This document shows positions 8,062-63,246 of a DNA stretch of 64,000 nt, piece by piece. Made by a program: the position numbers and the translations under genes. Position 1 is the first letter of the stretch; each line of letters starts with the position of its first letter. A model generated the notes under the pieces. It made no database searches. It was not told the origin of the DNA and saw only the letters and a list, made by a program, of their open reading frames with translations. The stretch covers positions 62,001 to 126,000 of the IMG/VR virus record IMGVR_UViG_3300035182_002586. One strand, given 5' to 3'.

Positions 8062-8121
8062 GCACGAGATAAAAGGAAAGTAGCGGGTGAAATCTCCGCC
8101 TGGGAGGCTAGAGGGTCCCCT

Positions 8122-8436
8122 TCAACCTTCGCGTGAGGCGTCCCACACGTCCCTTGGCACCCAACAGACGGGGGCGCCGTCACCGCGTCGGATGACTACC
8201 ATCCCGTTCTCGTCGTTCTCGTCCACCAGCTCAGCGTAGTCCCCCGCCTTCGACTCAAAGGGAGGCGTGGAGAGTACCTGCGCGACCTGCGCCCAGTCCG
8301 CAGCGGAGACGAAGGCGACCTCCGCTGCATACGTGATGGCTGCACCGCACGTGCAGACCTTCGGCAGGTCCTCGATCGGGGTAGGGTCTACCCCGAACAG
8401 AACGTCGATGTTCTCGTGCTTGAAGTTGCAGCCCAT
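8122..8436 (-). CDS. Hypothetical protein with Cys motifs
   Basis: ATG 8436 lies 10 nt downstream of a GGTGTA motif. Confidence 0.6.
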   Translation of the reverse strand: MGCNFKHENIDVLFGVDPTPIEDLPKVCTCGAAITYAAEVAFVSAADWAQVAQVLSTPPFESKAGDYAELVDENDENGMVVIRRGDGAPVCWVPRDVWDASREG

Positions 8437-8454
8437 GAGGGGTCCGTACACCAA

Positions 8455-9606
8455 CTAGGCCCACACCTCACCCCTTCGGATCTTGCCGATCAGGGACCGT
8501 GCCACTCCGAATATTTCCGCCAGAGAAGCGTCATTTTCACCTGCGGCCGAACGCGCTCGGATGGAAGCGACCCTTTCCACGTCGAGCTTCCCCGTACGAC
8601 CGGAGGTGCGCCGCGTTCGGTTCTGCTCAGTCCTGGAACCCCAACGACAGTTCGCAGGCCAACCGCGGACCGTGCACTCTGGGCACTTCCCACACGAGTA
8701 GTGGCCGCTCCGGTCGACGCGCAACAACGTGTGCTGCGGAGATGGCTTCACGCCCACGTCTTCAAGGAAGGCGGAGAATTCACCCCTCCACCGCGAGCAC
8801 ATTGTGATGCCGGCCGCGCCGTACTCAGAGAACTTCTCGTGCTTCTCGTTGAAGCATCGGGTCTTGATGCTTGCCCACGTCTTGTACTCTGGTGTCTTGG
8901 TCCCGCCGTGCGCGTAGTTGCCGTGTGCCTCACCTACAGGCACCGGACGGCGATTTAGACTCTGCTCCGCCTTCGACGCCCACCGGACGTTACCGGGTTC
9001 GTAGTTCCCGTTCGGGTTGGGGTAGCGGTCGAGGGAGTAGTCGGGGCCGGGCCTGTGTCCAACATACATGCAGAACGCGATGAAGTCGTTCACCCACGGC
9101 TCGTGGATACGAACGCCTCTACCACCCCACCCCGCATAGTTGCTACTTTTCGGGTTGAGGCAACGGTCTTTCATCGAAATCCAAGCCACATACTCGGGGG
9201 ACTTGATCATCCCGTGCTTGTAGTTCGTTGCCCGCCCGGAAGGTGGCTTGGGCATGCTCGACTTCGGGCGATGGGGGCGTCGATTGTTGTTCTGCTCTTC
9301 GCTGGTAGCCCAACGCAGATTCCCAGGCTCATACCCCCGATCGTTCTCGATTCGATCAAGAGAGTGGCGCAGCGAAGGGCGTGTTCCAACGTGCTCGAAG
9401 AAGGCGGTGAAGTTATTCACCCATCCTTCATAAATCCCGATTCCGCGTCCACCGTAGTCTGAGTACGCTTTATGGCTCGGGTTTAGACACCGAGCCTTGA
9501 TCTGCTGCCAGTAGCGATAAACTTCAGGTGCACTTATCGCCGCCTCTACCAGCCCACTGCGGGAGGCGGACCTCTCTAAGGATGTTGAATTTTTTGCCGC
9601 CGCCAA
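8455..9606 (-). CDS. HNH-like homing endonuclease with three tandem nuclease-like repeats and C-terminal HTH
   Basis: Three copies of Y..W..[IM]K.RC.N.....Y..YG.RGI.....W...F..F...VG.RP....SLDR....G.YEPGN.RW; lower GC than flanks; start uncertain. Confidence 0.75.
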   Translation of the reverse strand: MAAAKNSTSLERSASRSGLVEAAISAPEVYRYWQQIKARCLNPSHKAYSDYGGRGIGIYEGWVNNFTAFFEHVGTRPSLRHSLDRIENDRGYEPGNLRWATSEEQNNNRRPHRPKSSMPKPPSGRATNYKHGMIKSPEYVAWISMKDRCLNPKSSNYAGWGGRGVRIHEPWVNDFIAFCMYVGHRPGPDYSLDRYPNPNGNYEPGNVRWASKAEQSLNRRPVPVGEAHGNYAHGGTKTPEYKTWASIKTRCFNEKHEKFSEYGAAGITMCSRWRGEFSAFLEDVGVKPSPQHTLLRVDRSGHYSCGKCPECTVRGWPANCRWGSRTEQNRTRRTSGRTGKLDVERVASIRARSAAGENDASLAEIFGVARSLIGKIRRGEVWA

Positions 9607-10171
9607 TGGCCTCGAAGATCTTCTGGTAGGGGCGATAGACCTCGTTGTCGTCGGCGAGCTTCGTGAGGGCCTTCACCGCATTGAAGAACCGGTGTCGGAC
9701 CTTGCCTTGTGTGAGGTTCAGTAGCTCAGCCACCTCGGACTGGCAGGTCGTCTGCCACATGCCCACGAGGATGTTCACGTCGGTCTCGTCGAACGCCCCC
9801 GTCAGGTCCCGGCGCATGTCCTCTTCGGTCACGTGGGGGATCGACAGCAGGAACTTGATGCGCTGGATGCCGCGTTCCAGTCTGTAACTGATCGCCGCTT
9901 GGGTGACCTCGAAGATCTCGGCGATGTCCGCCTGCCTCTTGCGCGCGATGAAGTAGAGGTAGATGAGATCCGCTTCCCGCTGGGGGATACGGTCGAGGAG
10001 AGGGGCGATCCGGCTCTCGAAGTCCACGTCCGACAGGAAGGACGAGAACCCCTCGTCGTCCGCCACGGACTCGATCTCGTCGAGTAGGTCGTCCTCTTCG
10101 GAGCCCTCCTCGCCGGAAAAACGGTTCGCGAGTTGTGACGGATCGACGGGAATTACATAGCCAGATGACAT
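9524..10171 (-). CDS. Sigma-70 region-4-like HTH protein with two HTH motifs
   Basis: LDRIPQREADLIYLYF...QADIAEIFEVTQAAISYRLERG and QSEVAELLNLTQGKVRHRF. Confidence 0.7.
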   Translation of the reverse strand: MSSGYVIPVDPSQLANRFSGEEGSEEDDLLDEIESVADDEGFSSFLSDVDFESRIAPLLDRIPQREADLIYLYFIARKRQADIAEIFEVTQAAISYRLERGIQRIKFLLSIPHVTEEDMRRDLTGAFDETDVNILVGMWQTTCQSEVAELLNLTQGKVRHRFFNAVKALTKLADDNEVYRPYQKIFEAIGGGKKFNILREVRLPQWAGRGGDKCT

Positions 10172-10192
10172 GTGGGTGGACCCCTCGCCTGC

Positions 10193-12214
10193 TCAAGTTG
10201 TCTTGGCGAAGCCAGCTACCCGTTCCGGATGAAACGTGGGCAGGATGGTATCGCAATCCACATCTTGCAGCCGCGCTAGAGCGGCCTTCCGATCCGGTTT
10301 GGGGTCGATCGTCGTGATCGGCAGGTCGATGCGGAGCGTCATCAGCTCCGCGTTGAGTCTGACCTGTTTCTCCGACGAGCGCATCTTGGCATACTGCGAC
10401 TTCGTGAGTCCCGCCAGGTTTGACGCGAAAATCTTGTCGATCGTACCGTACGCTCGGACAAGCCCGAGAAGAACCTTGCGATCGAACCCTACCCCGGGGA
10501 GCTTGTCCGAAGTATCCCCGTACAGCGCACGCAGAGCCACGATCTGGTCCGGGCCTACCCCCCAGGCTTCCTGGATGGTGTCCGGGTCATGAAAGGTTTC
10601 CTTCGCCTTCCCCACCGCAGGGGTCAGCAAGACATCCGTACGGCTGACCACCTGGAGAAGATCTCGGTCGGTGGAGAAGATAAGGTTCCGCTTCCCCGCC
10701 AAGGGGCCGCGTACGAGGGCCGCGATCACGTCGTCGGCCTCTTCCTCCGGATGGTAGGATTGAGACACACCTAGGAGGGGGAGCGTCTCCTTGATCCACG
10801 TGAGCTGCTCGGGGGTGATGGGGAGCTGCTTGCGGTCGGCTTTGTAGCCCGCGTACGCTGCCTTCCGTCGCCCCGAGGAGCCGTCCCACACAACGTGGAT
10901 GAGGGCGCCGGAGTAGCGCTTGACGAAGCTCCCGAGGCTCCTCAGGAACCCCGTGTAGATGCCGGAGGGTCTACCCTTCGAGTCCCTCAGCTCCGAGAGG
11001 CCGGGGGCGTACGCACACCTTGCTGCGAGGTTCAGGCCGTCCACCACTACATGGTCGATCGTCCCGTGAGGGGCCGTCGCAGGGTCCGGCTCTGGAAACG
11101 ACGGATTGTGGTCCATGTCGATCTCCAGGACGGCGCTCATGCTTTCCTCGATCAAACGGACCTCCTCCCCGATCGCTTCCAGGCGACCCACTGCATCCTT
11201 GAGCCAGAGCCACTCCATAGCGCGCTCGTCGACACGAGCACGGGATGGTGGAGTGTAGAACACGTTCACGAATGAATACAAGGGGGTCCAGCGAGACTCC
11301 CATGAGGCCAGACGCCCCAACGTCTTGGTGCGTTCACTCAGATCTACCAGAGAGGCTGCACTGACTTGCCGCGTCACCCTGGAAACAACAGGCTCGGTGG
11401 CCTGCCACTTGGACAGCCAGGACGCCACCCTCTTGAGGACGACGGCCTTCATGGAGAGGGGCTTGGGGTCGAACTTCGTGTAACCGAGGGCCTGGACGAA
11501 CCCGTAGAGGGCCTGCCACTTGGGCACCCACACCGACAAGCGCCGGTGGGCTTCAGCCGGACGGAGCAGTTTGGCCCCGTTGTTTCTCCACAAGAGGACG
11601 GGGCGCATGGACCTGAGCCAAGCGAGAGCTTCCGCCATGCGGCGCTCCACGGCGGGCTTCGGAGCCTTGGTGACGAGCTGGAGGAAGTTGCGGGGGAGGG
11701 TGACGATCGCTTCCTTGGAGCGGAGCTTCACGAGCACCTGCACCTGCGAAAGCTCTTGGATGTCCTCGTGGACAATGGCCTGAATCTGTCGGTAGGGCCC
11801 CGACATGATCAGTACAGTGTCACCCACAGAAATGCCTTGTTCACTCTCTTGGCTGACTTGCGCCTTCATTCGACGCACTTGCGCGTCGGTGGCCAAGGCC
11901 AGCTTGCCGTTACGCTGTAGAACGGCCGCTACATACCGAGTGTTCGCAAGACGTACGTAGACCTGATCCGGGTGCGTCTTCTTGACGAACGCGTACCCAT
12001 CGAATGCGTACCGAACTACCTTGTCCTGCCCTACGGTCGTCACCGCCGCAGGGACGAACACTTCGGCATCCCGGATAGAGCCTCGAATGGACCGGCGGAT
12101 GAGATCGGGATCCTCGCCTTCCGCCTTTGGGCCTAGTTCGAGGATCACCCACTGGTCAGCCACCGCCACCACCGGCCCCCGGCCAGGTACGTTCAAACTC
12201 CCTACGCCAGGCAT
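10193..12214 (-). CDS. Fusion of NusG/RfaH-like (NGN+KOW) domain and 5'-3' exonuclease/flap endonuclease (PolI N-terminal type)
   Basis: N-term WVIL...VFVP...FDGYAFV...VGDTVLIMSGPY; C-term VVDGLN, VVWDG, YKADR, EADDVIA, STDRDLLQ, GDTSDKLPGV. True start probably a GTG near 12160-12172. Confidence 0.8.
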   Translation of the reverse strand: MPGVGSLNVPGRGPVVAVADQWVILELGPKAEGEDPDLIRRSIRGSIRDAEVFVPAAVTTVGQDKVVRYAFDGYAFVKKTHPDQVYVRLANTRYVAAVLQRNGKLALATDAQVRRMKAQVSQESEQGISVGDTVLIMSGPYRQIQAIVHEDIQELSQVQVLVKLRSKEAIVTLPRNFLQLVTKAPKPAVERRMAEALAWLRSMRPVLLWRNNGAKLLRPAEAHRRLSVWVPKWQALYGFVQALGYTKFDPKPLSMKAVVLKRVASWLSKWQATEPVVSRVTRQVSAASLVDLSERTKTLGRLASWESRWTPLYSFVNVFYTPPSRARVDERAMEWLWLKDAVGRLEAIGEEVRLIEESMSAVLEIDMDHNPSFPEPDPATAPHGTIDHVVVDGLNLAARCAYAPGLSELRDSKGRPSGIYTGFLRSLGSFVKRYSGALIHVVWDGSSGRRKAAYAGYKADRKQLPITPEQLTWIKETLPLLGVSQSYHPEEEADDVIAALVRGPLAGKRNLIFSTDRDLLQVVSRTDVLLTPAVGKAKETFHDPDTIQEAWGVGPDQIVALRALYGDTSDKLPGVGFDRKVLLGLVRAYGTIDKIFASNLAGLTKSQYAKMRSSEKQVRLNAELMTLRIDLPITTIDPKPDRKAALARLQDVDCDTILPTFHPERVAGFAKTT

Positions 12215-13685: not shown

Positions 13686-13772
13686 GATCGGTTCTCCTCC
13701 GCTACACCGGGTAGACAGGGGCCCTCGGGCAGAGTGGTACTCTGCCCGTACCGAGCCGTCTGCCGATCGGAT

Positions 13773-14279: not shown

Positions 14280-14307
14280 GTGCCTATCTCCTCAGGGTGT
14301 GACGGGA

Positions 14308-15789: not shown

Positions 15790-15880
15790 GCCTCTTATCG
15801 CGTGCTCCCGGTGTGAAGTACGCGAAAATCCAGGACACTGGAAGGGTCGACTGGATCCGCGCCCATGCGGAGGGTTGCTG

Positions 15881-17026
15881 ATGGCCGCCAGTCCTGTGGT
15901 TCAGGTGAAGGACGGTGCGGGCGCCTACGGCTCGACCGACAACGGGGTCGACACCACCCCGGGCAACACCATCTCGATCAAGCTCTTCGACACGCTCGAC
16001 GTGACCACCTGGTACCTGGAGGTCATCGGGACGGATGAGCTATCGAGTGCACCGACGTTGGTGGGCGTGAACGTCCTCACCCACGAGGTCGCGTCCCCCG
16101 CCACTGTCGTGACCTTCTCGAACCAGATCAGCCTCGGGCGCGCACTGCTCTTCCGCTCGACTGTCGTGGGTCCGTTGGGGAGCGTTGCGACGACGTTCGC
16201 CCTCTTCAACCTCACCGCGGGTCTTCGACGTGTCGGCCCCACGGGGATGACGCGAGAAGGTGACCTGACGTACGGGTGGACGTCGATCGTCAACCCCCTC
16301 ATTCGCAACCCTGCGGCACTCCCTCCGGGCACGTCGACCAGCGACGTTCTCACGTGGGACGGTGGAGCCTACAACCCGCGCCGCCTCACGGAAGATGACA
16401 TCCTCCCAGGGTTCCTCGTCACCTCGTTCGCAGGCGGCACATCAATCGAACTCGGGGCCACGGTGACGACGCCCGCGATGACCGCGAGCTACTCTTCGGC
16501 CCCGGATGTGACCGCAAATTCTGTGGTCCTGACTGACACCGAGGCCACTCCGTCGAAGGACGTGACGCTGACCCCCACTGCGTTCACGAGCGATGGAACG
16601 TACACGAAGGCTGTCTACGGGCAGTCCGTCACGCTGACCCTCACCGCCAACAAGGGCGCCGTGACGAAGGTGGCCACCTCCACTTTCACGTGGATCCAGA
16701 ACGTCTACTGGGGCAAGTCCTCTTCTGCCGGCCCGTACAACGCGGCCTTCATCACGGGCCTCGCCCACAACGCCCTGGCCTCCTCACGCGCTACGACGCT
16801 CAACATGGCGGGCGGTGATGCTCCCGGAGTGGGTGAGAAGATCTATTACGCGTTCCGCTCTGCGTACGGAACGCCAACGTTCTACATCGGTGGCTTCGAG
16901 GGCGGCTTCGAGCTGATCGCAGCCGCCGTGGCTGTCACCAACGGCCACGGAGTGACCGAAAACTACGACCTGTGGCGTTCGGTCCAAGCGAATCTTGGTG
17001 ACCCTACCATCGTGACGGTGACCTGA
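15881..17026 (+). CDS. Putative virion structural / tail-associated protein
   Basis: T/S/G-rich beta protein directly upstream of the fibre gene; TTATC motif at 15795. Confidence 0.65.
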   Translation: MAASPVVQVKDGAGAYGSTDNGVDTTPGNTISIKLFDTLDVTTWYLEVIGTDELSSAPTLVGVNVLTHEVASPATVVTFSNQISLGRALLFRSTVVGPLGSVATTFALFNLTAGLRRVGPTGMTREGDLTYGWTSIVNPLIRNPAALPPGTSTSDVLTWDGGAYNPRRLTEDDILPGFLVTSFAGGTSIELGATVTTPAMTASYSSAPDVTANSVVLTDTEATPSKDVTLTPTAFTSDGTYTKAVYGQSVTLTLTANKGAVTKVATSTFTWIQNVYWGKSSSAGPYNAAFITGLAHNALASSRATTLNMAGGDAPGVGEKIYYAFRSAYGTPTFYIGGFEGGFELIAAAVAVTNGHGVTENYDLWRSVQANLGDPTIVTVT

Positions 17027-17027
17027 C

Positions 17028-20000
17028 ATGGCCGTTCGAGTCCAAGACACGATCCTCCCGAAGAACGACGCCGACTTCCCCGTCGTCGACTCATCCTCCA
17101 TCAAGGGTGGGCACCAGGAAGTCGCCAACGCCACGGCCCGGGATGCGATCACAGCCTCGCACCGCTCCATCGGCATGTTCGTCACCACGCAGGACGACGG
17201 CAAGGTGTGGAAGCTCGGCAACGACCTCCTCACCTGGACTGAGTTCACCGGTGGTGGAGGCGGCGGGTTCACCGCAGGTGGAGATCTCACCGGTACGAGC
17301 ACGAACCAGACGGTGGCCGCCATCCAGGGCATCCCCTCGATGGATCCGGTCTTCAAGGCCGATCGAGATCTCGTCGAGATCAAGAGCACGACGACGACCT
17401 CTGGCATCACCCTCAACCTGGCTTCCCCTCGCGACATTGTAAGCGACGGCACGCACATCTACGTCGCTCAGAACGGCCAGAACGCGCCTATCGCAGGGTC
17501 ACAGAACGTCTGGAAGCTCACGATGTCCGGCGGGACCGTAACCGCCGCCGTTGCGTGCGACCTCACGGCAGGCCCCTTGGGTCTCGTCACCGTGGTGCGT
17601 TGCCGAGGCATCGAGCAAGATGCCACCTACCTCTACGTCGCCACGTGGAACGCGCAGAACATCGCCATCATCGACAAGGCGACGATGACGCTCGTGGGGT
17701 GGGGCTACACAGGCGGCACCAGCGCGATGAGCGTGTGCGCCGACGGTGCAGGTAACTTCTACGCCTGCAATGACTTCAGTGAGATCTGGAAGTTTTCCAC
17801 TGCCGCGTGCATCGGTGCAGCTCCGAATACGGTGACTCCCGTACTCACGCTCCTCCCCAACGGAGGGACGTCTTTCGCAAGGTGGATCACCTACGGTGGG
17901 GGGTTCATTTGGGCTGCAAGTCCCGGTGGATACCTTGCCAAGATCGACCCCACGACGCTGACCGAAGTAACGGTCGTCACCGACGTGAACGGCGACACTG
18001 CCCTGATGGTGGCGAGGTACGCCTTCGGTGCACTGTGGGTCGCGAGCAACAACTCCACAGGTATCATCTACAAGGTCGATCCTACGACCCTCACGTGGAT
18101 CACCACCATCAGTGGGTTTGCACACCCATCCACGCCGATGTTTGGGACCATCCCGAACATCATCGAGGGTCCAGACGACCTCGGTAACCCCAATGCTTGG
18201 TTGTGGGTCTGCTCCATGGAGCAGAAGTTCGGTGGCCCCTACGTCGCAGCCGTCGATCCCGTCGGCCTTGTGCTCGCCTCCTCCACATACCAGCCGAGTG
18301 CGAACAACAGAGACGCCTACGAGGGTCTCTGTGTCGTCGGGAACTACGTGTACGCGGGAGGGTTCGATTCAAGCTGGGGACCGAGCACACCGCACATCGG
18401 CTACGTGAATGCCGTCACGAGTGCTTCGGGCAAGGTCACCGGAAGCTCCACGACGACAACTACTTGGGCCCTGGGGTACAAGCCGATCGACGGAGATCTT
18501 TCTGGTCCGATCGACAAGAACTCCGTCCACTACCTGCGTGGTGTGGCTGTACCTGATCCGGCCGGAGTCGTCACGGGGTACGTCCCCACCCTCGCCCAAT
18601 CGACCTTCCCACTGCTCAATGCGATCGCGTGGGACTCTAGCCACCAGAAGATGTGGGTGGGTCTTGCAGGAGACACTGCCGGCGCAGTCTTCTCCTACGA
18701 CCCTACAACCACCATCGGGGCCTATCACACCCCCAGTGACCCGGGCTACGCAGTAATCAGCCAATACCTGGCAGTCGCAGTCGACGCCAACTATGTGTTC
18801 GTAGCAGGAAGGAGCACTTTCGCGGGGCTCAGTGCCAACATCTTCGCTCTCGATAAGCTGACGGGAGCTGTAGTTGGTGTTGCAGCCTTCTACCGTGCTT
18901 CCAGTCTCTACTCTGACGGGACGTACTTGTGGGCAGTGACAAACCAAGGTTTCAGTGCAGGTCTAGCCAAGATCTCCATCGCGGCTATGATCGCAGCCGG
19001 ACCTACGGGTAGCCCGCCAGCCGCAACTGCATCCCTCCTGATGACCGGCCTACAAGGGGTCACAGGCGATGGTACGTGGGTCTACGTCTCCAACAACAAC
19101 ACCAGCAACATCCACCGCATCGACCCGGCTACTGCACTGGTCAGCGCGTCCTATGCAGACCCCGCAGTCAGCGGTGTCTATGGCCTGGTCATGGCTGGCG
19201 GTCATGTGTGGTGTGCAGCCTATGACCACGTACTGGAGGTAGACCCTGCGGGTATGACCCTCGTGAGTACTACCCCGCTAGGCACTTTCAACATCACGTC
19301 CATCGCATATGACGGGACCCGGGTGTGGGCGGGGTCTCTCTCTACGCGGGATATCTTCGGACTCACGGTGCCTGGGGGTGGACTCGCATACACGATCACT
19401 CCAACGGACATCTCCGATAACCACAAGAGTCTAGCCTATGACGGAACGTATCTGTGGGGGGTAGGTAACACCAGCACCACAGACGCTATCACCCGCTTCA
19501 CAGATCCGGCGGGTGTGGAGAACCTCCGTTACTTCGGCCCGTGGCGTCTCGACTACGCTGCTGCTGGTGGGACGCTTGCAGGCGATGTCACTGGTGCTCC
19601 GGGCGCCAACACGGTCACCCGTCTTCAAGGCTTTACGGTCAACAGTGCAGTCCCAACGGTAGGTGCTGCTCTAGTCTGGCAGTTCCCTGCGGGATGGACG
19701 CCGACCACGCCGGGAGGCGACCTCTCAGGTAGTTCGTTCGCAACGCCAACGGTGGCTAGGATCAACGGCTACACCGTCAGCGCAACGCCTACGCTCTCTG
19801 GGCAAGTTCTCACGTGGAACGGTTCGGCGTGGGTCGCTCAGGCTGTCGGAGGGTCCAACCCCGGCACGCCGCAGACGGGCAACAACTACGCCCCCGTCAA
19901 GGTCAACGTCTCGGGTGCGGCCATCCAATCGTGGATCAACCTGAACGGCGGCACGGGCTACCGCTCGGATCTCGTGGACGGTGACGTAGACGGGATGCTC

Positions 20001-22463
20001 CAAGCATCACAGGTCTCCGGCGCCGCCGGAGCGCCCATGAAGGCTGCCCGGTCCACCGTGGACGATATGACCCAGCAGATGGCCCCTCCCCTGGTGAGCG
20101 GCGGCACGGGTCAGGGTCCGAAGGCCGACGGATACACGCTCCAGATCGTCTCTGGGACGAACCCCCAAGGAATCGCCAACGACGCGAGCACTGGAGTCGT
20201 TGCGATCACTCGATCGGGCTGCGACGATACCTACTTCATGTCCGGGTCCTCCACGGGAGCGACGCGGGCACCTCGTGTCATCAGCCTGGAGACCGACCTT
20301 ACGGACGAGACGGCACAGGGGGTCCGACCGGCGATCACCGGCAAGACCGTGTTCCGGAACGGGCTTGCATACGCTGTCAAGGAGTATGCAGGCAGCCGTC
20401 AATACGTGGTCGAAGTTGACTACGCACGCGGGACTGCACGCAAGGTCGTTACGAACATCACCTCGTCCTTGCGCGAGATGTTCCTGGACTCTGCTTGGAA
20501 GACCTCCAGCCAGTCGGGGGACAGCGATGTCTACGCCTGCTGGTACAAGGGCTTCGGCAACGACTACTGGCTCCAGGGGGTCTCGTACAGCACTGCAACG
20601 GCTGCTTCCGTTACGGTGGCTGGAGGTGTCACCATCACAGCCATGTGCGTCGCCCAACCGGTGGGTGGTTACGCCTCCCCGGGGGGACGCATCTATCTCG
20701 GCCAGAGCGACGGCACCATCCAGGAGTGGGACGGGACGGTCAACCCTCCCGTGTTCGTACGCACCCTCAGTGACGCCTCCATCAGCGGCTCACCCATCGT
20801 GGCGATGCGGCCGATCTTCTTCAACGCGAGCAATCAGTGGCTTCACGCCATCAACGCAGCCGGTGTTCTGGCTCGATTTCACATCGTCACGAACGTGTTC
20901 CAGGCGTCCTTGAGCACTGGGCTCACCAACGCCGTGGACATCACAATCGCACCGAACCGCATCTGCCTCGTCATCGCCAACGCGACGAGCCTCCGGTCCA
21001 TCACCTCCCCGACGGGAGCGATGGCTCTGAGTACGCTGCTCACCCCCGTCAAGTTCGGGACGATCAGCAGCTTCAACTTCAAGGCTCTCGCTCAATCCAC
21101 GACCGGTGGCGGCTCCTACAACCTGTGGGTCGCCGACCAGACCAATGGTCTCTGGAAAGCGAACATCAACTCGGGTTCCGGCGTCCTAACCTGGGACGGC
21201 CTGTACAACGGGTTCTACGACATCTCCGGGCTCTCCCGTTGGGCGAAACCCAACATCAATTTCGACGACCCCGAGCACTACACGGGCAGCCTCCCTGTCC
21301 GCAACATGATGGGTGGGAATCGCCTCGGGGGCGCCTACTGTCTGACCCCGGCGTACAAGCTCACCGTTGGAAAGACGCTCAAGGTCGTGTCGGGCACAGG
21401 ACCGACGGAGATCTTCCCCGGGTACGTCAGTCGACCGGGATCGAAGGACATCATCCAGCTCTATATGGCCCCCGGGGCCGGGACCTACAGTGGTGCTGTC
21501 ATTCCTCTCACGGGCGCTTGGGCCGATGCCTATGGCCTAGGAAACCCTCCCGACGAGATTACCGCCAATGGTCTGTGGGCACTCAACAGCTCCTACTCAT
21601 CCGTCTTCACAATGGACCAGTACGGGCGTCTGTTCTCGTTCTCCGTGGACGGCACGACGGGGCGGGGGTCGTCGTTCGCAGCTCGACTGCTCTTCACGGG
21701 GCTCAACCCGATCGGCGGTGGGCCAGGCGGAGTCATGGACACGGACGCCTCGAACGGCGGCCGCTTCTTCCTCCTCGCAGGACGAACGGTCTCGCTGATC
21801 GACGCGACCTACAACTCGTACCGGCGCGAAACGCTCGTGTGGTCGGTGAACATTCACCTCAACCTAACGGGCGGGGAGCTGCCCACGTCCATCTGCTCGC
21901 TGAGCACCTACGTCTACGTCTCCACGGATCAGGGGCATGTCCTCCAGTTCAACGCTTCCGACGGCAGCTACGTCCGAACGGTGAACGCCTCGGAGACGGG
22001 TGCAGGTGCCTCGATCGTGAAGATCGTCTCTGACACCTCTGCCGGGAAGATCTACTGGATCACGGGCGGCGCTCTCAAGCAGTTCAACCGCCTCACTGGC
22101 AACACAGCGGCCATCGACGGAACCGGAACCCTCACGCTTGGCGTCACGGCTCGCGACCTCTCTCACAACAACGGATCGGTCGGCAGCGGGTTCGAGCGCC
22201 TCGCCATCCTCACGGCCACGGGCATTGTTTGGCTCAACGGGTTCCAGACGGGCACGCCCCCGACAGTGTACACGCCGACCCCGGACAACACGACCACCAT
22301 CGTGGGGGCTATCTCCCTGGGTCACATCACATATAACGGCCTCGGCACGTGGTGGGCGACGGACACAGGCGGGGACGTCCTGTGGGAAATCGGCATGAAC
22401 ACGTTCACCAACGTGGCGACACTCACGTCGTACGCCATCAGTGGACTTGTGGATTACGTCTGA
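17028..22463 (+). CDS. Large tail fibre / receptor-binding protein with multiple beta-propeller modules
   Basis: 1811 aa; fibre-type N-terminus (ARDAI....R..GM.V....DG..WKL); GDL[ST]G linker repeats; many A[YS]DG..[LV]WV blade repeats. Confidence 0.75.
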   Translation: MAVRVQDTILPKNDADFPVVDSSSIKGGHQEVANATARDAITASHRSIGMFVTTQDDGKVWKLGNDLLTWTEFTGGGGGGFTAGGDLTGTSTNQTVAAIQGIPSMDPVFKADRDLVEIKSTTTTSGITLNLASPRDIVSDGTHIYVAQNGQNAPIAGSQNVWKLTMSGGTVTAAVACDLTAGPLGLVTVVRCRGIEQDATYLYVATWNAQNIAIIDKATMTLVGWGYTGGTSAMSVCADGAGNFYACNDFSEIWKFSTAACIGAAPNTVTPVLTLLPNGGTSFARWITYGGGFIWAASPGGYLAKIDPTTLTEVTVVTDVNGDTALMVARYAFGALWVASNNSTGIIYKVDPTTLTWITTISGFAHPSTPMFGTIPNIIEGPDDLGNPNAWLWVCSMEQKFGGPYVAAVDPVGLVLASSTYQPSANNRDAYEGLCVVGNYVYAGGFDSSWGPSTPHIGYVNAVTSASGKVTGSSTTTTTWALGYKPIDGDLSGPIDKNSVHYLRGVAVPDPAGVVTGYVPTLAQSTFPLLNAIAWDSSHQKMWVGLAGDTAGAVFSYDPTTTIGAYHTPSDPGYAVISQYLAVAVDANYVFVAGRSTFAGLSANIFALDKLTGAVVGVAAFYRASSLYSDGTYLWAVTNQGFSAGLAKISIAAMIAAGPTGSPPAATASLLMTGLQGVTGDGTWVYVSNNNTSNIHRIDPATALVSASYADPAVSGVYGLVMAGGHVWCAAYDHVLEVDPAGMTLVSTTPLGTFNITSIAYDGTRVWAGSLSTRDIFGLTVPGGGLAYTITPTDISDNHKSLAYDGTYLWGVGNTSTTDAITRFTDPAGVENLRYFGPWRLDYAAAGGTLAGDVTGAPGANTVTRLQGFTVNSAVPTVGAALVWQFPAGWTPTTPGGDLSGSSFATPTVARINGYTVSATPTLSGQVLTWNGSAWVAQAVGGSNPGTPQTGNNYAPVKVNVSGAAIQSWINLNGGTGYRSDLVDGDVDGMLQASQVSGAAGAPMKAARSTVDDMTQQMAPPLVSGGTGQGPKADGYTLQIVSGTNPQGIANDASTGVVAITRSGCDDTYFMSGSSTGATRAPRVISLETDLTDETAQGVRPAITGKTVFRNGLAYAVKEYAGSRQYVVEVDYARGTARKVVTNITSSLREMFLDSAWKTSSQSGDSDVYACWYKGFGNDYWLQGVSYSTATAASVTVAGGVTITAMCVAQPVGGYASPGGRIYLGQSDGTIQEWDGTVNPPVFVRTLSDASISGSPIVAMRPIFFNASNQWLHAINAAGVLARFHIVTNVFQASLSTGLTNAVDITIAPNRICLVIANATSLRSITSPTGAMALSTLLTPVKFGTISSFNFKALAQSTTGGGSYNLWVADQTNGLWKANINSGSGVLTWDGLYNGFYDISGLSRWAKPNINFDDPEHYTGSLPVRNMMGGNRLGGAYCLTPAYKLTVGKTLKVVSGTGPTEIFPGYVSRPGSKDIIQLYMAPGAGTYSGAVIPLTGAWADAYGLGNPPDEITANGLWALNSSYSSVFTMDQYGRLFSFSVDGTTGRGSSFAARLLFTGLNPIGGGPGGVMDTDASNGGRFFLLAGRTVSLIDATYNSYRRETLVWSVNIHLNLTGGELPTSICSLSTYVYVSTDQGHVLQFNASDGSYVRTVNASETGAGASIVKIVSDTSAGKIYWITGGALKQFNRLTGNTAAIDGTGTLTLGVTARDLSHNNGSVGSGFERLAILTATGIVWLNGFQTGTPPTVYTPTPDNTTTIVGAISLGHITYNGLGTWWATDTGGDVLWEIGMNTFTNVATLTSYAISGLVDYV

Positions 22464-23096: not shown

Positions 23097-24029
23097 CTAG
23101 AGGACCGAAACACCCCGGAACTTCTTCAAGTGCTCCGGGATCTCGGGCTTCAGCTCCGGAGGCGCCCCCGACATCACCGCCTCGAAGTTCTCCAACACTC
23201 CGGGCTTGGCCATCGAGGTCATCCCGAAGTTGGAAAGGGCGAACAGCTCGGCGAACGATTCCCCGTCGTTGATGCTGTACTTCGTCGTGTGCCACTCGGC
23301 CCGGTCGAAGTCCACCTTGAGGTGGTGTTTCGCCTCGTATCTATGACCAAGCTCGTGGGTCACCACGTAGCTGAAGCCACCGTAGCCCGACCCGGCCCGC
23401 TCGATGCGCCCGCCAACCGTCGCGCGGATCCAGAGGATGTCCCCCTCCCGCCCGTACTTCCCGCTCGCCGTCCCACGGAAGTCCTTGGGCCCCGCCAGGT
23501 GGACTTTGATCCCACCGGAGAGCGCTCCTCGGTGCCACCCCTTCAAGCCGGCGAAGATGCCCTCCATCTCCGCGATCATGGCGTCCAGCTTCTCATCGTT
23601 GACGCCGACCATGTTGACGTAGGTGTTACCCCCGACCTTCTTCTCTCGGGTGAGAGCCTTCGCACCCCCCTCCACCGAAGAGAACGCCGACACCCAGGCG
23701 GGGACCAACGCCTTCATTCGCTGGTCTTCCCACAGCGAGCGAATCGAGTTTGTCAGGGCGCCAGGAAGGTAGTGCTCGTAGTACTCTACGTCCCTCTCGA
23801 TGGAACGATAGAACCGGTCCAGCTCTTCCTTCTCCCGCTTCATCCCCTTGGGCGTGTAGCGCGTCTGGAAGTGGAAGTTGTGCACGATCCACTTTGCGAA
23901 CTCCTGAAGCTCGTGCTTCGGAGGCTTCTCCGGGTCGTAGGACAGCAACTTGTCGACCTTCGACACGAAGTCGTGTTCGAGAGACGCTGCCTGGAAGCGC
24001 CGCGCCACCTTGATCGCGAGAGGGTCCAT
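23097..24029 (-). CDS. Zincin-type metallopeptidase with KVARRF leader
   Basis: VTHELGH plus downstream ESFAELF; ATG 24029. Confidence 0.7.
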   Translation of the reverse strand: MDPLAIKVARRFQAASLEHDFVSKVDKLLSYDPEKPPKHELQEFAKWIVHNFHFQTRYTPKGMKREKEELDRFYRSIERDVEYYEHYLPGALTNSIRSLWEDQRMKALVPAWVSAFSSVEGGAKALTREKKVGGNTYVNMVGVNDEKLDAMIAEMEGIFAGLKGWHRGALSGGIKVHLAGPKDFRGTASGKYGREGDILWIRATVGGRIERAGSGYGGFSYVVTHELGHRYEAKHHLKVDFDRAEWHTTKYSINDGESFAELFALSNFGMTSMAKPGVLENFEAVMSGAPPELKPEIPEHLKKFRGVSVL

Positions 24030-24092
24030 CACACGTGTAGGTAGATAAGCAGAACCATCGACAAGAGCCCGGTGGCCGGTGTATTTCGGGGT

Positions 24093-35535: not shown

Positions 35536-35573
35536 CCGTGTACTTATCGTGACGTGTAGGGGAGAGGTGCCTG

Positions 35574-57275: not shown

Positions 57276-57320
57276 CACGCCGCTAGCGGTCCTTACCCAT
57301 AGGCTCGTCGGAGGAACACT

Positions 57321-57722: not shown

Positions 57723-57982
57723 GCTAGGCCGACCGTCCCGACAGAGAGCAAGAGGGTGCGGATCGCATCCGCTTGGCTGAGCAACCGATCGGCCCGTTGA
57801 AGGACCGCCTCGACTTCCTTCGAGAGCGCCTCCATCGCGGGCCGAGCGCTTTCTGGGGTGCACGGGTCGTCCAGCAGAAGACGGATATCCTTGAGCCGCA
57901 GAGCTGCGTCACTGCGCACAACGAGCAGCTCTGCGATGTCCGTCTCGTGGTGTTCGAGAATGGATTGACGCGTCCCCTTCAT
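57719..57982 (-). CDS. Hypothetical coiled-coil protein
   Basis: ORF. Confidence 0.5.
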   Translation of the reverse strand: MKGTRQSILEHHETDIAELLVVRSDAALRLKDIRLLLDDPCTPESARPAMEALSKEVEAVLQRADRLLSQADAIRTLLLSVGTVGLA

Positions 57983-58017
57983 CCCCTAGATCCTCCACCA
58001 AAGGATCCGACAGCCCA

Positions 58018-58317
58018 CTATTCCGTGAGGAAACCCGTGGCGCGCCAACGTGGGGGTTCGTTCCCTACCTGTGTGAATGCCAGAGGGACGACAACACTCT
58101 CGGCTCTACCTTGGAGTCCACTCGGTAGTGCGTTCTCCACAGTCAGACGGAGATACCCGCCCGTCATCCACGAGACGTAGACGACATCCCCCACCGAGAT
58201 CCCTCCCTCTTCGAGCACGGGGTCCGGGAGCTTGGAGCCCTCTCGTTCGAGGGACTTGTGCACCTCCGGGCGCAGGTAGCTCCGGACCGTCTTGGTGACT
58301 CGCAGGTCTTCACGCAT
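58018..58317 (-). CDS. Hypothetical protein
   Basis: GGTGTA 11 nt upstream. Confidence 0.55.
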   Translation of the reverse strand: MREDLRVTKTVRSYLRPEVHKSLEREGSKLPDPVLEEGGISVGDVVYVSWMTGGYLRLTVENALPSGLQGRAESVVVPLAFTQVGNEPPRWRATGFLTE

Positions 58318-58355
58318 GACGGGGAGCCTACACCGCGCCGGTGTACAAGGCTCGC

Positions 58356-58763
58356 ATGTCCGACCCTACCGATCCCGCCGCCGTTCAGCCCGCCGTGTCC
58401 GCTGCGAAAGCCGCCTTCGAGGCGGACAAGACGGCCCCCGTCCTCGACTACGAGACCTTCCAGAAGGTCGACCTCCGCGTGGGCTACGTCCTGGAGGCCG
58501 AGCGCGTGCCGAAGAGTGACAAGCTCCTCAAGCTCCAGGTCAACGTCGGTGAGCCGCAACGCCGCCAGATCGTCGCGGGTATCGGCAAGTCGTTCACGCC
58601 GGAAGACATGATCGGCAAGCAGATCGTGATCGTCGCGAACCTCGCCCCGTGCAAGATCATGGGCGTCATGTCCTACGGGATGGTCCTCGCGGCCGGAACG
58701 CCCGAAGACCTCGCCATGCTCACGCCCTCGTGCAGGCGCGAGCCCGGCACCAAGGTGAAGTGA
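58356..58763 (+). CDS. tRNA-binding OB-fold protein (MetRS C-terminal / Trbp111 / CsaA type)
   Basis: FQKVDLRVG.VLEAERVPKSDKLLKLQV..G...RQIVAGI...NLAP.KIMGV.S.GMVL. Confidence 0.9.
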   Translation: MSDPTDPAAVQPAVSAAKAAFEADKTAPVLDYETFQKVDLRVGYVLEAERVPKSDKLLKLQVNVGEPQRRQIVAGIGKSFTPEDMIGKQIVIVANLAPCKIMGVMSYGMVLAAGTPEDLAMLTPSCRREPGTKVK

Positions 58764-59830
58764 TGAAGATCGCGCTGATCGGCGGGGTGTTCGACGACGC
58801 GGGTGGTCGCAAGTCCGGGTACGTCACCCGGCTCCAGGCGGAGGTCGTGGGACAGCTCGGGGGTGACTCGCTGGACCTGTACGTCAACGGCGGCCCCGCC
58901 AGCGAGCTGGAGAGCCTCGTAGAGCGCCTCCAGGGCATCGACGTGGCCCTCTGGTTCGCCGACGTGCCGAACCACCTACCGAAGCTCGTCGGGAGCCTCA
59001 AGGCCCGCTGGCCGAAGATGCTCCTGGTCACCTCGAAGCGGAATCTGGACGGGGCCTACCCCATCTCCGAGCTTCTCGGGCGAGCGCTCAAGACCAAATC
59101 GAACCTCCTCGTCGAGATGACGGGTGGCCGGACGAAGGTGGAGTCGACCGTCCTCGACCCTCTCGGCTCGTCGTACTGCACCAAGGAGACGGACATCGGG
59201 AAGGTGGCCGGAACGCTTCTCGGCCGGCTGCGCCGTCTTCGTGGGTTCGGACGGGTCGGCTCCGAGCAGGTCGGAGAGAAGATCGCGGCCCCGGACGACC
59301 CGGAGTTCTTCGCGCTCGTCCGCGAGCAGGCGGAGCAGTTCCACGCGATCATCCACGGGGTCGGTCACGAGCGGATGATGGGGAACGCCTCGTTCCGCTG
59401 CGCCAAGGGGTTCCCCTCGGTCCGGTCCGGCAACCTCATCTTCGTGTCCCGCCGGGACATCGACAAGCGGTTCATCGCCCCCGAGAATTTCGTGGCCGTG
59501 GACGCCGACTCGAACAACCCGGTGCGTTACTACGGCGCGGAGAAGCCCTCGGTCGACACGCCCATCCAGGTGCGGCTCTACCAGTACTACCCCCGCGTCC
59601 GGTACATGCTGCACTCGCACACGTACATCGATGGAGCGCCCACGACTTCCGAGCCCGTCCCCTGCGGCGCCGTCGAGGAAGCTGACCAGGTGTTCGCGCT
59701 CTTCCCGGATGCGGGGCTGGTGGACTTCTGCCTCAACCTGCGCGGCCACGGGAGCATCGTGCTCGCCTCCAGCGTCACGGGTCTGCGGGGCTGGCCGTGG
59801 GGCCCGAGGCCGGTGCCGGAACCCGTCTGA
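58763..59830 (+). CDS. Class II aldolase/adducin-domain protein with possible CoaB-like N-terminal domain
   Basis: GNASFR, PSVDTP, HSHTY, NLRGHGSI; N-term PKLV..LK..WP..LLV.SK. Confidence 0.7.
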   Translation: MKIALIGGVFDDAGGRKSGYVTRLQAEVVGQLGGDSLDLYVNGGPASELESLVERLQGIDVALWFADVPNHLPKLVGSLKARWPKMLLVTSKRNLDGAYPISELLGRALKTKSNLLVEMTGGRTKVESTVLDPLGSSYCTKETDIGKVAGTLLGRLRRLRGFGRVGSEQVGEKIAAPDDPEFFALVREQAEQFHAIIHGVGHERMMGNASFRCAKGFPSVRSGNLIFVSRRDIDKRFIAPENFVAVDADSNNPVRYYGAEKPSVDTPIQVRLYQYYPRVRYMLHSHTYIDGAPTTSEPVPCGAVEEADQVFALFPDAGLVDFCLNLRGHGSIVLASSVTGLRGWPWGPRPVPEPV

Positions 59831-60036
59831 TGTTCGACCACAACGAGGTCGCGGGGGCCGGCGAGGTCTTCGTGTGCGCGTGCTGTGGGCGCCGGTCGAA
59901 GGACCGGGCAGGAAGAATGCGGATCAGCTCTCATTGGGACGAGAGCTGCGTCTTCCACGCTGTCCGGGTCTACGAGGCCAGTGTCGTGCTCGAAAACGGG
60001 CTCGTCATCGCTGCGGACGCCGTGAGACCGAACTAG
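59830..60036 (+). CDS. Small Cys-rich protein
   Basis: VCACCG...WDESC. Confidence 0.55.
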   Translation: MFDHNEVAGAGEVFVCACCGRRSKDRAGRMRISSHWDESCVFHAVRVYEASVVLENGLVIAADAVRPN

Positions 60037-60239
60037 TACACGTAGTCACCGTTGGCGATGACCTTGACGAGGAGCTTCGCAAGAGCGTCGTCCCCGAAGA
60101 CGTTCTCGACGGCGCCCTTCATGATGGCGCGTTCGAGGTCCTGGATCGCAGCGGCCGTCAGGACTTCCCGGAGGTCTTCTCGGTGAACACCACAGACCGT
60201 CGTGGTGCCGTTCTTGTTCCTGCGGGCTCAGTAGGACAT
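60033..60239 (-). pseudogene. Small gene with in-frame TGA at codon 4 (MSY*ARRNKNG...)
   Basis: AGGAGG and TGGATC-class motif upstream; frame open after the TGA until TAG at 60033. Confidence 0.45.
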
Positions 60240-60392
60240 GACCCTCCTACAACGGGAGGCGGGCGGTGATCCATCCGTCGGTGTACGATCGCAGCATGTC
60301 CGTGCGAGCTTCCACTGCCGTCGCGGTCGCCATCGGCGCCCTGCTCGTGATCGTCCTGTTCCCGCAACTGGTGCGGCTCCGGATCAGTTGAG

Positions 60393-60501
60393 TGGTGGAC
60401 ACGGCCGGGTTCGAACCGGCATCGAGGGCTTTCGGCCCTCCGTTTTACCTGCCCTGGCTACCGGCGGCGCCACCTGCCAGGACTATGAAACGTACGTGCC
60501 C
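60393..60501 (-). ncRNA. tRNA-like RNA with encoded CCA and expanded D-arm
   Basis: Acceptor GGGCACG/CGTGTCC-A-CCA; T-arm GCCGG-TTCGAAC-CCGGC; D-stem CGTTT/AAACG; GAGGG-CCGAAAG-CCCTC arm. Confidence 0.7.
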
Positions 60502-60508
60502 GTAAGAG

Positions 60509-60682
60509 CTACTTCGACGGGTTCAGGTTCGGACAGTAGGGGTTGCTGTGCGTGCGGAGCGGGTGCCCGAAGCAGTGACACGTGGCCTCGACGGAGGTGC
60601 CGCCGCCCTCGAAGTGGGCGACCTTCACCTTGACCCCGTTCTTCACGGTCATCTCGACCCTCACGAGATTGCTCTGTCCCAT
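60509..60682 (-). CDS. Small hypothetical protein
   Basis: GGAGG RBS, TGGATC-class motif; C.C..H...H...C. Confidence 0.55.
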   Translation of the reverse strand: MGQSNLVRVEMTVKNGVKVKVAHFEGGGTSVEATCHCFGHPLRTHSNPYCPNLNPSK

Positions 60683-60740
60683 GCCTCCCTGTACCACGTG
60701 ATGTGAGGGGCGATCCATCCGGCCGGTGTAGAAAGGGGGC

Positions 60741-61229
60741 ATGGGCAATCACGGGCTCGTCGCCGTCTACGCTGGCACGTTCGACCCCCCGACCATCGGG
60801 CACGAGGACCTCATCAAGCGGGCGCTCGGCTTCTGCGAGAAGCTGATCATCGGCATCGGGGTCAACTCGACCAAGACGCCGATCTTCACCGTCGAAGAGC
60901 GCGTCGAGATGCTCCAGAAGCTCGCGGACAACCCCCGGGTCGAGGTCGTGGCCTTCCAGGGGCTCCTCGTCGACTTCGTGCGCAAGAGCGGCGGGAGCAT
61001 GATCATCCGCGGCTTGCGTGCCGTGATGGACTTCGAGTACGAGATGGGCATCGCGCACGCGAACGCCGACCAGGCGCCGACGGTCGAGACCGTCTTCCTC
61101 GCGACCAAGCCGCAGTACTCGTTCATCTCCTCGTCTGTCGTCCGTGAGGTCGCCAAGTACGGCGGCTCCGTGCGACACTACGTCTCCCCGCTCGTCGAAG
61201 AGGCCCTCAGGGCCAAGTTCAGGAAGTAG
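60741..61229 (+). CDS. coaD: Phosphopantetheine adenylyltransferase
   Basis: YAGTFDPPTIGH, IIRGLR...DFEYE, ISSSVVRE. Confidence 0.95.
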   Translation: MGNHGLVAVYAGTFDPPTIGHEDLIKRALGFCEKLIIGIGVNSTKTPIFTVEERVEMLQKLADNPRVEVVAFQGLLVDFVRKSGGSMIIRGLRAVMDFEYEMGIAHANADQAPTVETVFLATKPQYSFISSSVVREVAKYGGSVRHYVSPLVEEALRAKFRK

Positions 61230-61253
61230 TAGTAGTAGGCGTTCTGGTGTCTT

Positions 61254-61327
61254 GCTCCCGTGGCCGAGTGGTTCAGGCGGGCGACTTTAAATCGCCGTCA
61301 ACGTGGGTTCGAGTCCCACCGGGGGCG
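61254..61327 (+). tRNA. Ochre suppressor tRNA, anticodon TTA at 61287-61289
   Basis: Full cloverleaf: GCTCCCG/CGGGGGC, GCC-GAGTGGTTCA-GGC, GGCGA-CTTTAAA-TCGCC, GTGGG-TTCGAGT-CCCAC; discriminator G; no encoded CCA. Confidence 0.85.
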
Positions 61328-61857
61328 CTCCTCTTCAAGTGGTTGCGGACAGATGATTCGGCTACCCCAAGCTGTCTGACTACTTCACTCTTTGAGGTCT
61401 TTGCAATCAAGTCCAGAAGCTCCTCCATCGGAGGCCATGCGGCACGCTTAGCTCTAGGCTTTCGGTGCCCACACGAACGACACTGCACACTGGACTTGGC
61501 GATCGTAGTCCCGCACCGACAGGTCTTGTGTGTGGCCTTCGCGATGCTCCGCCCACAGAACGTTGCGGTCTGTGAGTCGCAGTTAGGACACAGAAACCTC
61601 AAGTTTTCTAGTCTGTGATCACGATTCACACCGTTGATATGGTCCAGCCGAAGCACGAGAGGTTTTCCTCCCCACTCGGGCCCAAGCTGACAGCCAACAC
61701 AGTGGGATGTGTCCAGGGCCAGGCGCGCGATAGCGTTGCGCACGTAGGCTGCCCCTCCACCAGAAGCAGAGGGTCGACCTAGAGCACGAAGAATTGCAGT
61801 GACACTAGCGTGCTCTCGCACAAGCACCACCAGGGTGTCGTCAGAGATGGGTTACAT
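61273..61857 (-). CDS. HNH endonuclease overlapping the tRNA antisense; upstream ATG at 61857 followed by in-frame TAA (alternative GTG start 61830)
   Basis: LRLDHINGVNRDHRLENLRFLCPNCDSQT; C-terminal HTH. Confidence 0.75.
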
Positions 61858-61895
61858 CGAGTTTAGTGGCGGTATAAATGACCTACTAAACTCGA
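61857..61895. repeat. 11-bp-arm inverted repeat at the start of the HNH gene
   Basis: tcgagtttagt-N17-actaaactcga. Confidence 0.75.
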
Positions 61896-61923
61896 CCCTC
61901 TCGATCAGGTGTACCATCCCCCC

Positions 61924-62274
61924 ATGCAGGATCGAAGCTACCTCGCCGATCTCACCGAGGCACAGCTCAAGGGTGTCGCAGGTGCACTGGAGGCGCGGAT
62001 CAGGGACTCCAAGAAGAAGGCCACGCAGGCCCTCTCCAAAGACCCCGAGCTGATGAAGAGCTGGATCGCCACAATGTCGGCGGTCCCCGCTACGACCTCA
62101 GAGGAAGAAGACGCGAAGGAACTGGTCCGCAAGGCCCGCGAGGACCGTCGACTAGCCTTCGAGAAAGCCCTCGTCGAGCACCCGGAGGCGTACGTCCTCT
62201 ACCACATGGCGAACTACCTCGTCGGTCTTAGCGAGGCCGTCCGCAAGGAGCGGAGCGAGAGGGCTCGCAAGTGA
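61924..62274 (+). CDS. Hypothetical protein
   Basis: GGTGTA 10 nt upstream. Confidence 0.65.
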   Translation: MQDRSYLADLTEAQLKGVAGALEARIRDSKKKATQALSKDPELMKSWIATMSAVPATTSEEEDAKELVRKAREDRRLAFEKALVEHPEAYVLYHMANYLVGLSEAVRKERSERARK

Positions 62275-62275
62275 C

Positions 62276-62902
62276 TCAGTGGTAGTCGTAGCGAAGACCG
62301 AGCTGATCCCACTCGTGCGTCAGCTCTTGCATCGTCATGTTCGCGGCCTTGGAGATGTTGTCCTTGAGCCAGCCGTAGAACAGGATGCCGTCCTTCTTGC
62401 TCACGGGTGAGTAGAGGGTGTCCTGACGGTAGCCGTGGGCCGCCTTGCCGGGCGCCTCGATGACGGTGCTGTTGGTCACGTGGAAGTCGTGCGGGCTCGC
62501 CTGGATGCGGACGATGGTGCCGTCCGGGAACTTCTTCTCCAGCTTGATGGTGGTCCCCGGCGGCTCGACGTCGATCCCACGGAGTTCCCGCTCGTGGGTC
62601 TCCATCAGCTCCGGGTGGTCCGCCTTGATCTTCTCCAGGTGTGACTTCGCCTGGTCGTAGTTCATGTGCAGGATGGAGGTGACCGCCTGCTTGAGGATCC
62701 GGTCCGCCATCTCGTCGTTGAGCGTGTGCGGCATCACCGTCAGCTCACGGACCTTCTTGCCCCGCTTGCCGGCATTCGTCATGTCGGTGATCCGAACGCT
62801 CCCGTGGAAGCGGTGGATCTTGAGGTGCTCGGTGAAGGCGTGTTGCCCCACGTCCAGGCTGGCGGCAAGGAACTTGGCAGCGACTCGGCGGGCGAGGTCC
62901 AT
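62276..62902 (-). CDS. Hypothetical protein with RVAAKF leader
   Basis: MDLARRVAAKFLAAS; TTATC 13 nt upstream. Confidence 0.7.
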   Translation of the reverse strand: MDLARRVAAKFLAASLDVGQHAFTEHLKIHRFHGSVRITDMTNAGKRGKKVRELTVMPHTLNDEMADRILKQAVTSILHMNYDQAKSHLEKIKADHPELMETHERELRGIDVEPPGTTIKLEKKFPDGTIVRIQASPHDFHVTNSTVIEAPGKAAHGYRQDTLYSPVSKKDGILFYGWLKDNISKAANMTMQELTHEWDQLGLRYDYH

Positions 62903-62925
62903 GCCCACACCCCGTGATAAGACCT

Positions 62926-63222
62926 CTATCGCCCTACGCTGACCAGGGCGTCGTCGATCTGGTCCGGGTCCAAGCGGAAAGGACCCGGACCCCCTGCCCC
63001 GGGAGCCCAACCGGCCAGGACCCCTCGCCGGACCAGGGCCTCCACCTCGGTCGTTCCGATGGCGTCACATCGACGTACATCCACCGTGGCCACGAGGCAG
63101 CGCCCCGGGAACGCCTCCACCTCGATCGTCACGTTGAGACAGGGGGCCGCCCTCTTGGTGACCAGGAAGCGGTAGGAGGTGGTGTCGACGGTCAACCGCC
63201 GGCTGTGGTTAGGCAGGGTCAT
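62926..63222 (-). CDS. Hypothetical protein
   Basis: GGTGTA 11 nt upstream. Confidence 0.6.
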   Translation of the reverse strand: MTLPNHSRRLTVDTTSYRFLVTKRAAPCLNVTIEVEAFPGRCLVATVDVRRCDAIGTTEVEALVRRGVLAGWAPGAGGPGPFRLDPDQIDDALVSVGR

Positions 63223-63233
63223 GCCCTAGCTAC

Positions 63234-63246
63234 TACACCTTTTATC
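63234..63246. promoter_or_regulatory. Divergent GGTGTA (minus) and TTATC (plus) motifs
   Basis: tacacc-tt-ttatc between two divergent genes. Confidence 0.55.

What the first reader, a model, noticed from the sequence alone, without database searches (positions are those of the whole stretch)
8068..63246. Second motif (TTATC) marks structural and leader-tagged genes: likely late promoter
Seen in sequence: [CT]TTATC occurs upstream of the Ig-domain/head operon (8068-8072, minus), the fibre operon (15795), the KVARRF peptidase (24044, minus), 35574 (35544), the RVAAKF gene (62916, minus) and the YSYDHR gene (63242). This AT-rich word is uncommon in such GC-rich DNA, and for three genes the gap is 13-15 nt. 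Inference: a late promoter class. It independently groups the leader-tagged genes with virion genes.
Basis: partly seen in the sequence, partly recalled or inferred. Interest (0 to 1): 0.6.

Follow-up and report, generated by a model that had tools for sequence, protein, structure and literature searches.

The report
Virion-gene promoter element in huge phage
The short word TTATC is the core of a real, conserved 9-12 base signal that sits just upstream of the head, packaging, tail and "leader-tagged" genes of an uncultured 529 kb phage; it most likely acts as a single-element (T4-late-style) promoter, though its timing and the transcript starts are unmeasured.

Summary
All six cited [CT]TTATC copies exist at the stated coordinates, with the stated 13-15 nt gaps. 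The raw word is not enriched in the window (13 copies, 12.4 expected), and seven copies are noise.

The signal lies in position and orientation. Genome-wide (529 kb huge phage) the element is (a)tCCyCTT[A/G]TC. About 18-20 copies end 13-14 nt before an ATG with no Shine-Dalgarno (0/17). About 14 more lie 21-49 nt upstream with an SD in between.

It never co-occurs on a gene with the two other upstream signals (cCGGTGTAG; GATGGATC-N16-GTAG). It is the only one of the three inside the long head and tail gene arrays (11/28 vs 0/149, arrays delimited post hoc).

It heads blocks ending in the major head protein and the terminase, and precedes 5-6 of about 6 leader-tagged genes.

Relatives keep it at orthologous positions as TCTTTCTATA or CTTTTATG while the spacers drift: 32/43 loci, against 5/106 for operon-internal genes.

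Best reading: a -10-like, -35-less promoter class for virion genes. "Late" timing, the transcription start and the factor that reads it are inferred. Site 35543 is doubtful.

The parts
8068..8080 (-). Class 3 element ctttccttTTATC (core TTATC at 8072->8068), 21 nt upstream of the GTG at 8046, with the SD-like GGTGAGG in the spacer
   Evidence: Conserved upstream of the orthologous Ig-like gene as gGTTTCTTTTATCgg in L149 and gGTTTCCTTTTATGcg in L148, while the spacers differ.
1..8046 (-). Eight tightly packed co-directional genes headed by the 8072 element: weakly Ig-like 300 aa (7144-8046), then 139, 560, 755, 114, 134 and 233 aa, then the terminase large subunit (1-1204, continues beyond the window start; 675 aa)
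   Evidence: Gene map and intergenic gaps of -8 to 101 nt. Terminase: phrog_17415 at 2.7e-13 and phrog_2. Ig-like domain PF22544 at 8e-5, below cut-off. Syntenic in G001, L148 and L149.
15790..15799 (+). Class 3 element gcctcTTATC (PWM 17.1), 81 nt upstream of the ATG at 15881, with GGAGGG before the start
   Evidence: The G004 orthologue (50% identity) has ttctacTTATC 45 nt upstream of its start.
15881..22463 (+).
   Evidence: Only phrog_23630 (unknown function) matches the N-terminus of the 1811-aa protein.
24044..24053 (-). Element ggttctgcTTATC (PWM only 8.0), 14 nt upstream of the ATG at 24029, no SD
23097..24029 (-). Leader-tagged 310-aa protein (MDPLAIKVARRF...) with an HELGH zincin motif
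   Evidence: Look-alikes are phage ATLF/M90-type metallopeptidase clusters. No Pfam or PHROG hit.
35543..35548 (+). CTTATC copy, doubtful as a member: fused to GTGTAC and followed by GTGTAG (class 1) 14 nt before the ATG at 35574
   Evidence: PWM 9.8. No orthologue was available for a conservation test.
62916..62927 (-). Class 3 element gatagaggtcTTATC, 13 nt upstream of the ATG at 62902, no SD
   Evidence: PWM 12.5. The G005 orthologue (65% identity, leader MNPLAFRVAAR) has cCTTCTATAcc 56 nt upstream plus an SD.
62276..62902 (-). Leader-tagged 208-aa protein (MDLARRVAAKF...), function unknown
63234..63246 (+). Class 3 element acaccttTTATC (PWM 16.9), 15 nt upstream of the ATG at 63262. It lies back-to-back with the class 1 word GGTGTAGTAG of the divergent gene 62926-63222, within a 39 nt intergenic spacer.
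   Evidence: No sigma-70 consensus promoter anywhere in 61800-64000.
63262..63600 (+). 112-aa gene (MAYSYDHR...), function unknown
63601..64000 (-). 3' part of a 343-aa J-domain-like gene (MDLHRR...). Its start (window-equivalent 64632) and its cctcTTATC-N14 element (64647-64651) lie just beyond the window end.
   Evidence: (DnaJ 27.7 bits against a 27.8 cut-off).
9524..10171 (-). 215-aa protein with two sigma-70 region-4 HTH domains and no region 2; a candidate promoter-specificity factor encoded between the clamp loader/exonuclease genes and the packaging block
   Evidence: PF04545 at 43.4 bits against a 24.1 cut-off, two stretches. PHROG sigma families at 2e-8. PDB sigma region-4 hits. 62-64% identical in L148 and L149. 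The link to this element is inferred only.

Best explanation
The element (a)tCCyCTT[A/G]TC is a compact promoter element of the -10-only kind. In lower-GC relatives it reads TCTTTCTATA, CTTTTATA or TTTTATG. No -35 partner is conserved. It defines one of three mutually exclusive upstream signal classes in this 529 kb phage, and it is the class used by the virion (head, packaging, tail) gene blocks and by a family of N-terminally tagged proteins. RNA polymerase is presumably the host enzyme redirected by a phage factor, since no phage RNAP or full sigma is detectable. It would start a few bases downstream of the element. In the long-spacer sites the SD begins 9-14 nt after the element, so the start must lie within about 9-12 nt of it. 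Where the element lies 21-81 nt from the ATG, the mRNA would carry a normal SD leader. Where it lies 13-14 nt from the ATG, as in about half the sites, the mRNA would have only a roughly 2-7 nt leader without an SD and would be translated like a leaderless message. Shown here: the motif, its geometry, its exclusivity, its genomic partition and its conservation. Inferred: that it is a promoter, where transcription starts, which factor reads it, and that it fires late.
For: (1) Position and orientation. TTATC is 22 forward to 6 reverse in the upstream 50 nt. 10-12 copies sit at gap 12-16 against 2.1 expected. TTGTC shows the same peak (8/22) with the same cctc prefix. A PWM gives about 18 N13-type and about 14 long-spacer sites. 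(2) The three classes never share a gene. N13 genes have 0/17 SDs, against 51% for genes with none of the three signals. Long-spacer sites have an SD in 64%. (3) Partition. 11 of 28 class 3 genes and 0 of 149 class 1+2 genes lie in the long minus-strand arrays (Fisher p=2e-10). Those arrays hold the major head protein (4e-53), the head protease, and baseplate/tail proteins. Site 346319 heads 503 aa -> 209 aa -> major head protein. Site 353735 heads 1403 aa -> ... -> protease. Window site 8072 heads eight genes that end in the terminase. (4) Phylogenetic footprint. Upstream of the 503-aa orthologue, 32/43 distinct relatives (GC 50-66%) keep the element at gap 31-36. Upstream of the 1403-aa orthologue, 8/16 keep it at gap 13-17 without an SD. 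Operon-internal genes keep it in 5/106 (p=4e-18). Orthologous sites are shared with G004, G005 and L148 for window sites 8072, 15795 and 62920. Among 164 G000-G004 orthologue pairs the odds ratio is 6.4, p=0.004. (5) Divergent pairs need their own promoters. A 39 nt divergent spacer consists of one class 1 word plus one class 3 element. A 61 nt divergent spacer holds two class 3 elements back to back. No sigma-70 consensus promoter lies nearby. (6) The phage encodes sigma region-4-type proteins.
Against: There is no transcript evidence at all, because no RNA run holds this phage. The gene map and the limits of the 'structural arrays' are my own, and the limits were drawn after seeing the data. 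The tight 13-14 nt spacing would also suit an RNA-level translation signal. Several cited window sites score low with the PWM (8072: 9.4; 24048: 8.0), and the PWM rests on 19 seeds. Some class 3 genes are not structural: endonuclease VII, a J-domain protein, and neighbours of DNA polymerase. No gp55-type sigma was found (but the control did not ring either). Large gaps (600-950 nt) inside the tail array may hide other signals.
Confidence: 0.65

Rival explanations
1. The element acts in the RNA rather than the DNA. It could be a pyrimidine-rich, SD-independent translation enhancer or ribosome standby site placed 13-14 nt before the AUG. It could also be an endoribonuclease processing site that cuts polycistronic late transcripts between genes.
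For: The spacing to the start codon is very tight in half the sites, and those sites have no SD at all. The element often lies directly after the stop codon of the upstream co-directional gene, for example protease -> 503 aa. It is one of the few A/U-containing patches in GC-rich spacers.
Against: The same element occurs 21-81 nt from the ATG with an ordinary SD in between, and that distance varies between orthologues: 21 vs 34 nt, 81 vs 45 nt, 13 vs 56 nt. 7 of 28 sites face a divergent neighbour, where no upstream co-directional transcript could carry the element unless a promoter lies inside the neighbouring gene; one such spacer is only 39 nt. The element is mutually exclusive with two other promoter-like words that occupy the same slot.
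Confidence: 0.15
2. The element is an operator for a phage activator or repressor (for example the region-4-type HTH protein) and not the core element contacted by RNA polymerase. The true core promoters would be weak and unrecognised.
For: A tandem region-4 HTH protein is encoded next to the packaging block and is conserved in relatives. No -35 and no canonical TANNNT hexamer accompany the element. A few sites have an upstream GATA/GATC that could form a half-palindrome.
Against: The palindrome is not general, and the position matrix shows no conserved second half-site. The element sits at a fixed, very short distance from the start codon, or just ahead of the SD, which is where a -10-type element belongs. 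In relatives it reads TATAAA or TATACA, typical of -10-like melting elements.
Confidence: 0.12
3. Chance: TTATC is simply one of many AT-containing words that accumulate in slightly AT-richer intergenic DNA.
For: The window count equals the shuffle expectation. Other AT-rich 5-mers are also 4-11 fold enriched upstream of genes. Intergenic GC is 61.7% against 63.9% overall.
Against: Strand asymmetry of 22:6, a sharp spacing peak, a shared 4-7 nt prefix, mutual exclusivity with the other classes, and conservation at orthologous sites in genomes with about 47% protein identity.
Confidence: 0.03

Closest known systems
Phage T4 late promoters (TATAAATA at -10, read by host RNAP with gp55, gp33 and the gp45 sliding clamp)
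   Same: Both are a single short -10-type element with no -35 partner. In lower-GC relatives the element reads TCTATAAA or TTTATACA. Both mark head, tail and packaging genes, and endonuclease VII (gp49, late in T4) is a class 3 gene here. The phage carries a clamp loader close to a sigma-related factor gene.
   Different: In G000 the core is TT[A/G]TC with a C/T-rich prefix, not TATAAATA. No gp55-family protein was detected. Half the sites are only 13-14 nt from the ATG without an SD, which is not the T4 arrangement. Dependence on a clamp or on replication is unknown.
Leaderless-mRNA promoters of Actinobacteria and their phages (-10 TANNNT ending 6-8 nt before an A/GTG start)
   Same: SD-less genes have a promoter-like element very close to the start codon. 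The major head protein's only cultured relatives are myoviruses of Mycobacterium, Gordonia and Rhodococcus (about 28% identity).
   Different: The element ends 13-14 nt, not 6-8 nt, before the start codon. There is no conserved T at hexamer position 6. G-G-(T) at -3 to -1 suggests a start a few bases before the ATG rather than exactly at it.
-35-less middle/late promoters of other phages that redirect or replace host RNAP (Thermus phage P23-45 extended -10 promoters; phiKZ/AR9 non-virion RNAP late promoters)
   Same: Short phage-specific motifs close to the transcription start define temporal classes, and several classes coexist in one genome.
   Different: No multisubunit or T7-type phage RNAP is detectable here, and there is no TG extended -10. 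The comparison rests on my own knowledge of those systems, not on a test here.

Membership tests
T4-type late promoter system | Single -10 region element (TATAAATA-like) without a -35 element | tested here: inconclusive
   No conserved upstream partner appears in the matrices of 34 G000, 32 G004 and 40 orthologue sites. Relatives read TATA(A/C)(A/G), but G000 reads TT[A/G]TC. Without a mapped start, the position relative to it is unknown.
T4-type late promoter system | gp55-family late sigma encoded by the phage | tested here: inconclusive
   phrog_234 (the family of T4 gp55) finds nothing in G000, but the control rang nowhere either. Only region-4-type proteins and one weak region-2 hit (E=0.024) were found.
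T4-type late promoter system | Activation by a DNA-loaded sliding clamp plus a gp33 co-activator, coupled to replication | not testable with these tools
   A clamp loader is present (window 12156-13685). Function cannot be inferred from sequence.
Canonical sigma-70 promoter | TTGACA-like -35, 16-18 nt spacer, TATAAT-like -10 with A at position 2 and T at position 6 | tested here: not met
   No consensus match in window 61800-64000, which holds three class 3 genes. The matrices show no -35 and no conserved T at hexamer position 6.
Actinobacterial leaderless promoter | TANNNT hexamer ending 6-8 nt upstream of the start codon, which is itself the transcription start | tested here: not met
   The element ends 13-14 nt upstream. 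The spacer has no conserved hexamer, only G at -3 (13/17) and -2 (10/17) and T at -1 (7/17).
Jumbo-phage non-virion RNAP late promoters (phiKZ/AR9 type) | Phage-encoded multisubunit RNAP beta/beta'-like proteins | tested here: inconclusive
   PF00562 finds nothing in G000 while ringing in all 14 controls. However, phiKZ-type subunits are very divergent and could escape this model.
DnaA box (TTATCCACA) | TTATC followed by CACA | tested here: not met
   The positions after TTATC are not conserved, and none of the gene-proximal sites reads TTATCCACA.

The most novel reading that the evidence does not exclude
A widespread uncultured clade of huge phages (at least 576 IMG/VR contigs share the head protein) may run much of its virion-gene programme from promoters placed almost against the start codon. 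That would make a defined subset of late messages effectively leaderless, with 2-7 nt leaders and no SD. This subset includes a family of proteins with a conserved N-terminal MD(P)L..RVA(K/R)F tag. The promoters would be read with help from split or truncated sigma-like factors that have region 4 only. Promoter class, translation mode and a protein-targeting tag would then be co-ordinated in one regulon.
Probability: 0.25. Interest if true: 0.65.

Novelty: new member of a known kind. Interest (0 to 1): 0.45.

Why it matters
Huge phages from metagenomes are almost entirely unannotated at the regulatory level, and most of their proteins have no recognisable family. A conserved, easily scanned promoter class that marks virion-gene blocks gives a sequence-only way to delimit the late or structural regulon in this clade. 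It also flags ORFan proteins, such as the leader-tagged family with its HExxH peptidase, as probable virion-associated or late proteins. Finally, it allows synthetic reporters to be designed once a host is found. The SD-less 13-14 nt geometry is a testable hint that part of the late programme uses leaderless-type translation.

Tried and rejected
- **Whole-window word enrichment:** none.
- **Megablast of 20 kb against phages:** no match.
- **The search for related loci with the 310-aa protein:** nothing.
- **G002 (512 kb):** it has an orthologue of the 310-aa protein, but in AT-rich DNA, inside a longer open frame with an in-frame TAG. Not comparable.
- **G001 (436 kb, 50% GC), fetched whole:** only 127/702 proteins match, none of the N13 genes has an orthologue, and its upstream signals differ. 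No use for this test.
- **GATA-N7-TATC palindrome idea:** not general.
- **DnaA box, sigma-54 (-24/-12) and ECF (GGAAC...GTC) readings:** the flanks do not fit.
- **Anti-SD mimicry (GATCCTCTT vs the 16S 3' end):** noted but not testable; left aside.
- **Phage RNAP or sigma searches:** Sigma70_r2, RNAP beta, T7 RNAP and the gp55 family all blank. The last two had uninformative controls.
- **PDB sequence search of the 393-aa weak 'sigma' candidate:** blank.
- **RNA evidence:** no RNA run holds the phage.
- **Strain variation (read laying on 58001-64000):** contigs are fragmentary. No listed difference falls in either motif, but 570 differences were not shown, so there is no power.
- **Literature:** nothing on the nearest record LR745208 or on promoters of this clade.
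- **Rfam:** only the tRNA.
- **Atlas look-alikes for the 208-aa tagged protein:** no usable lead.
- **Not used:** the big protein searches, structure prediction and complex prediction. The claim did not rest on them.
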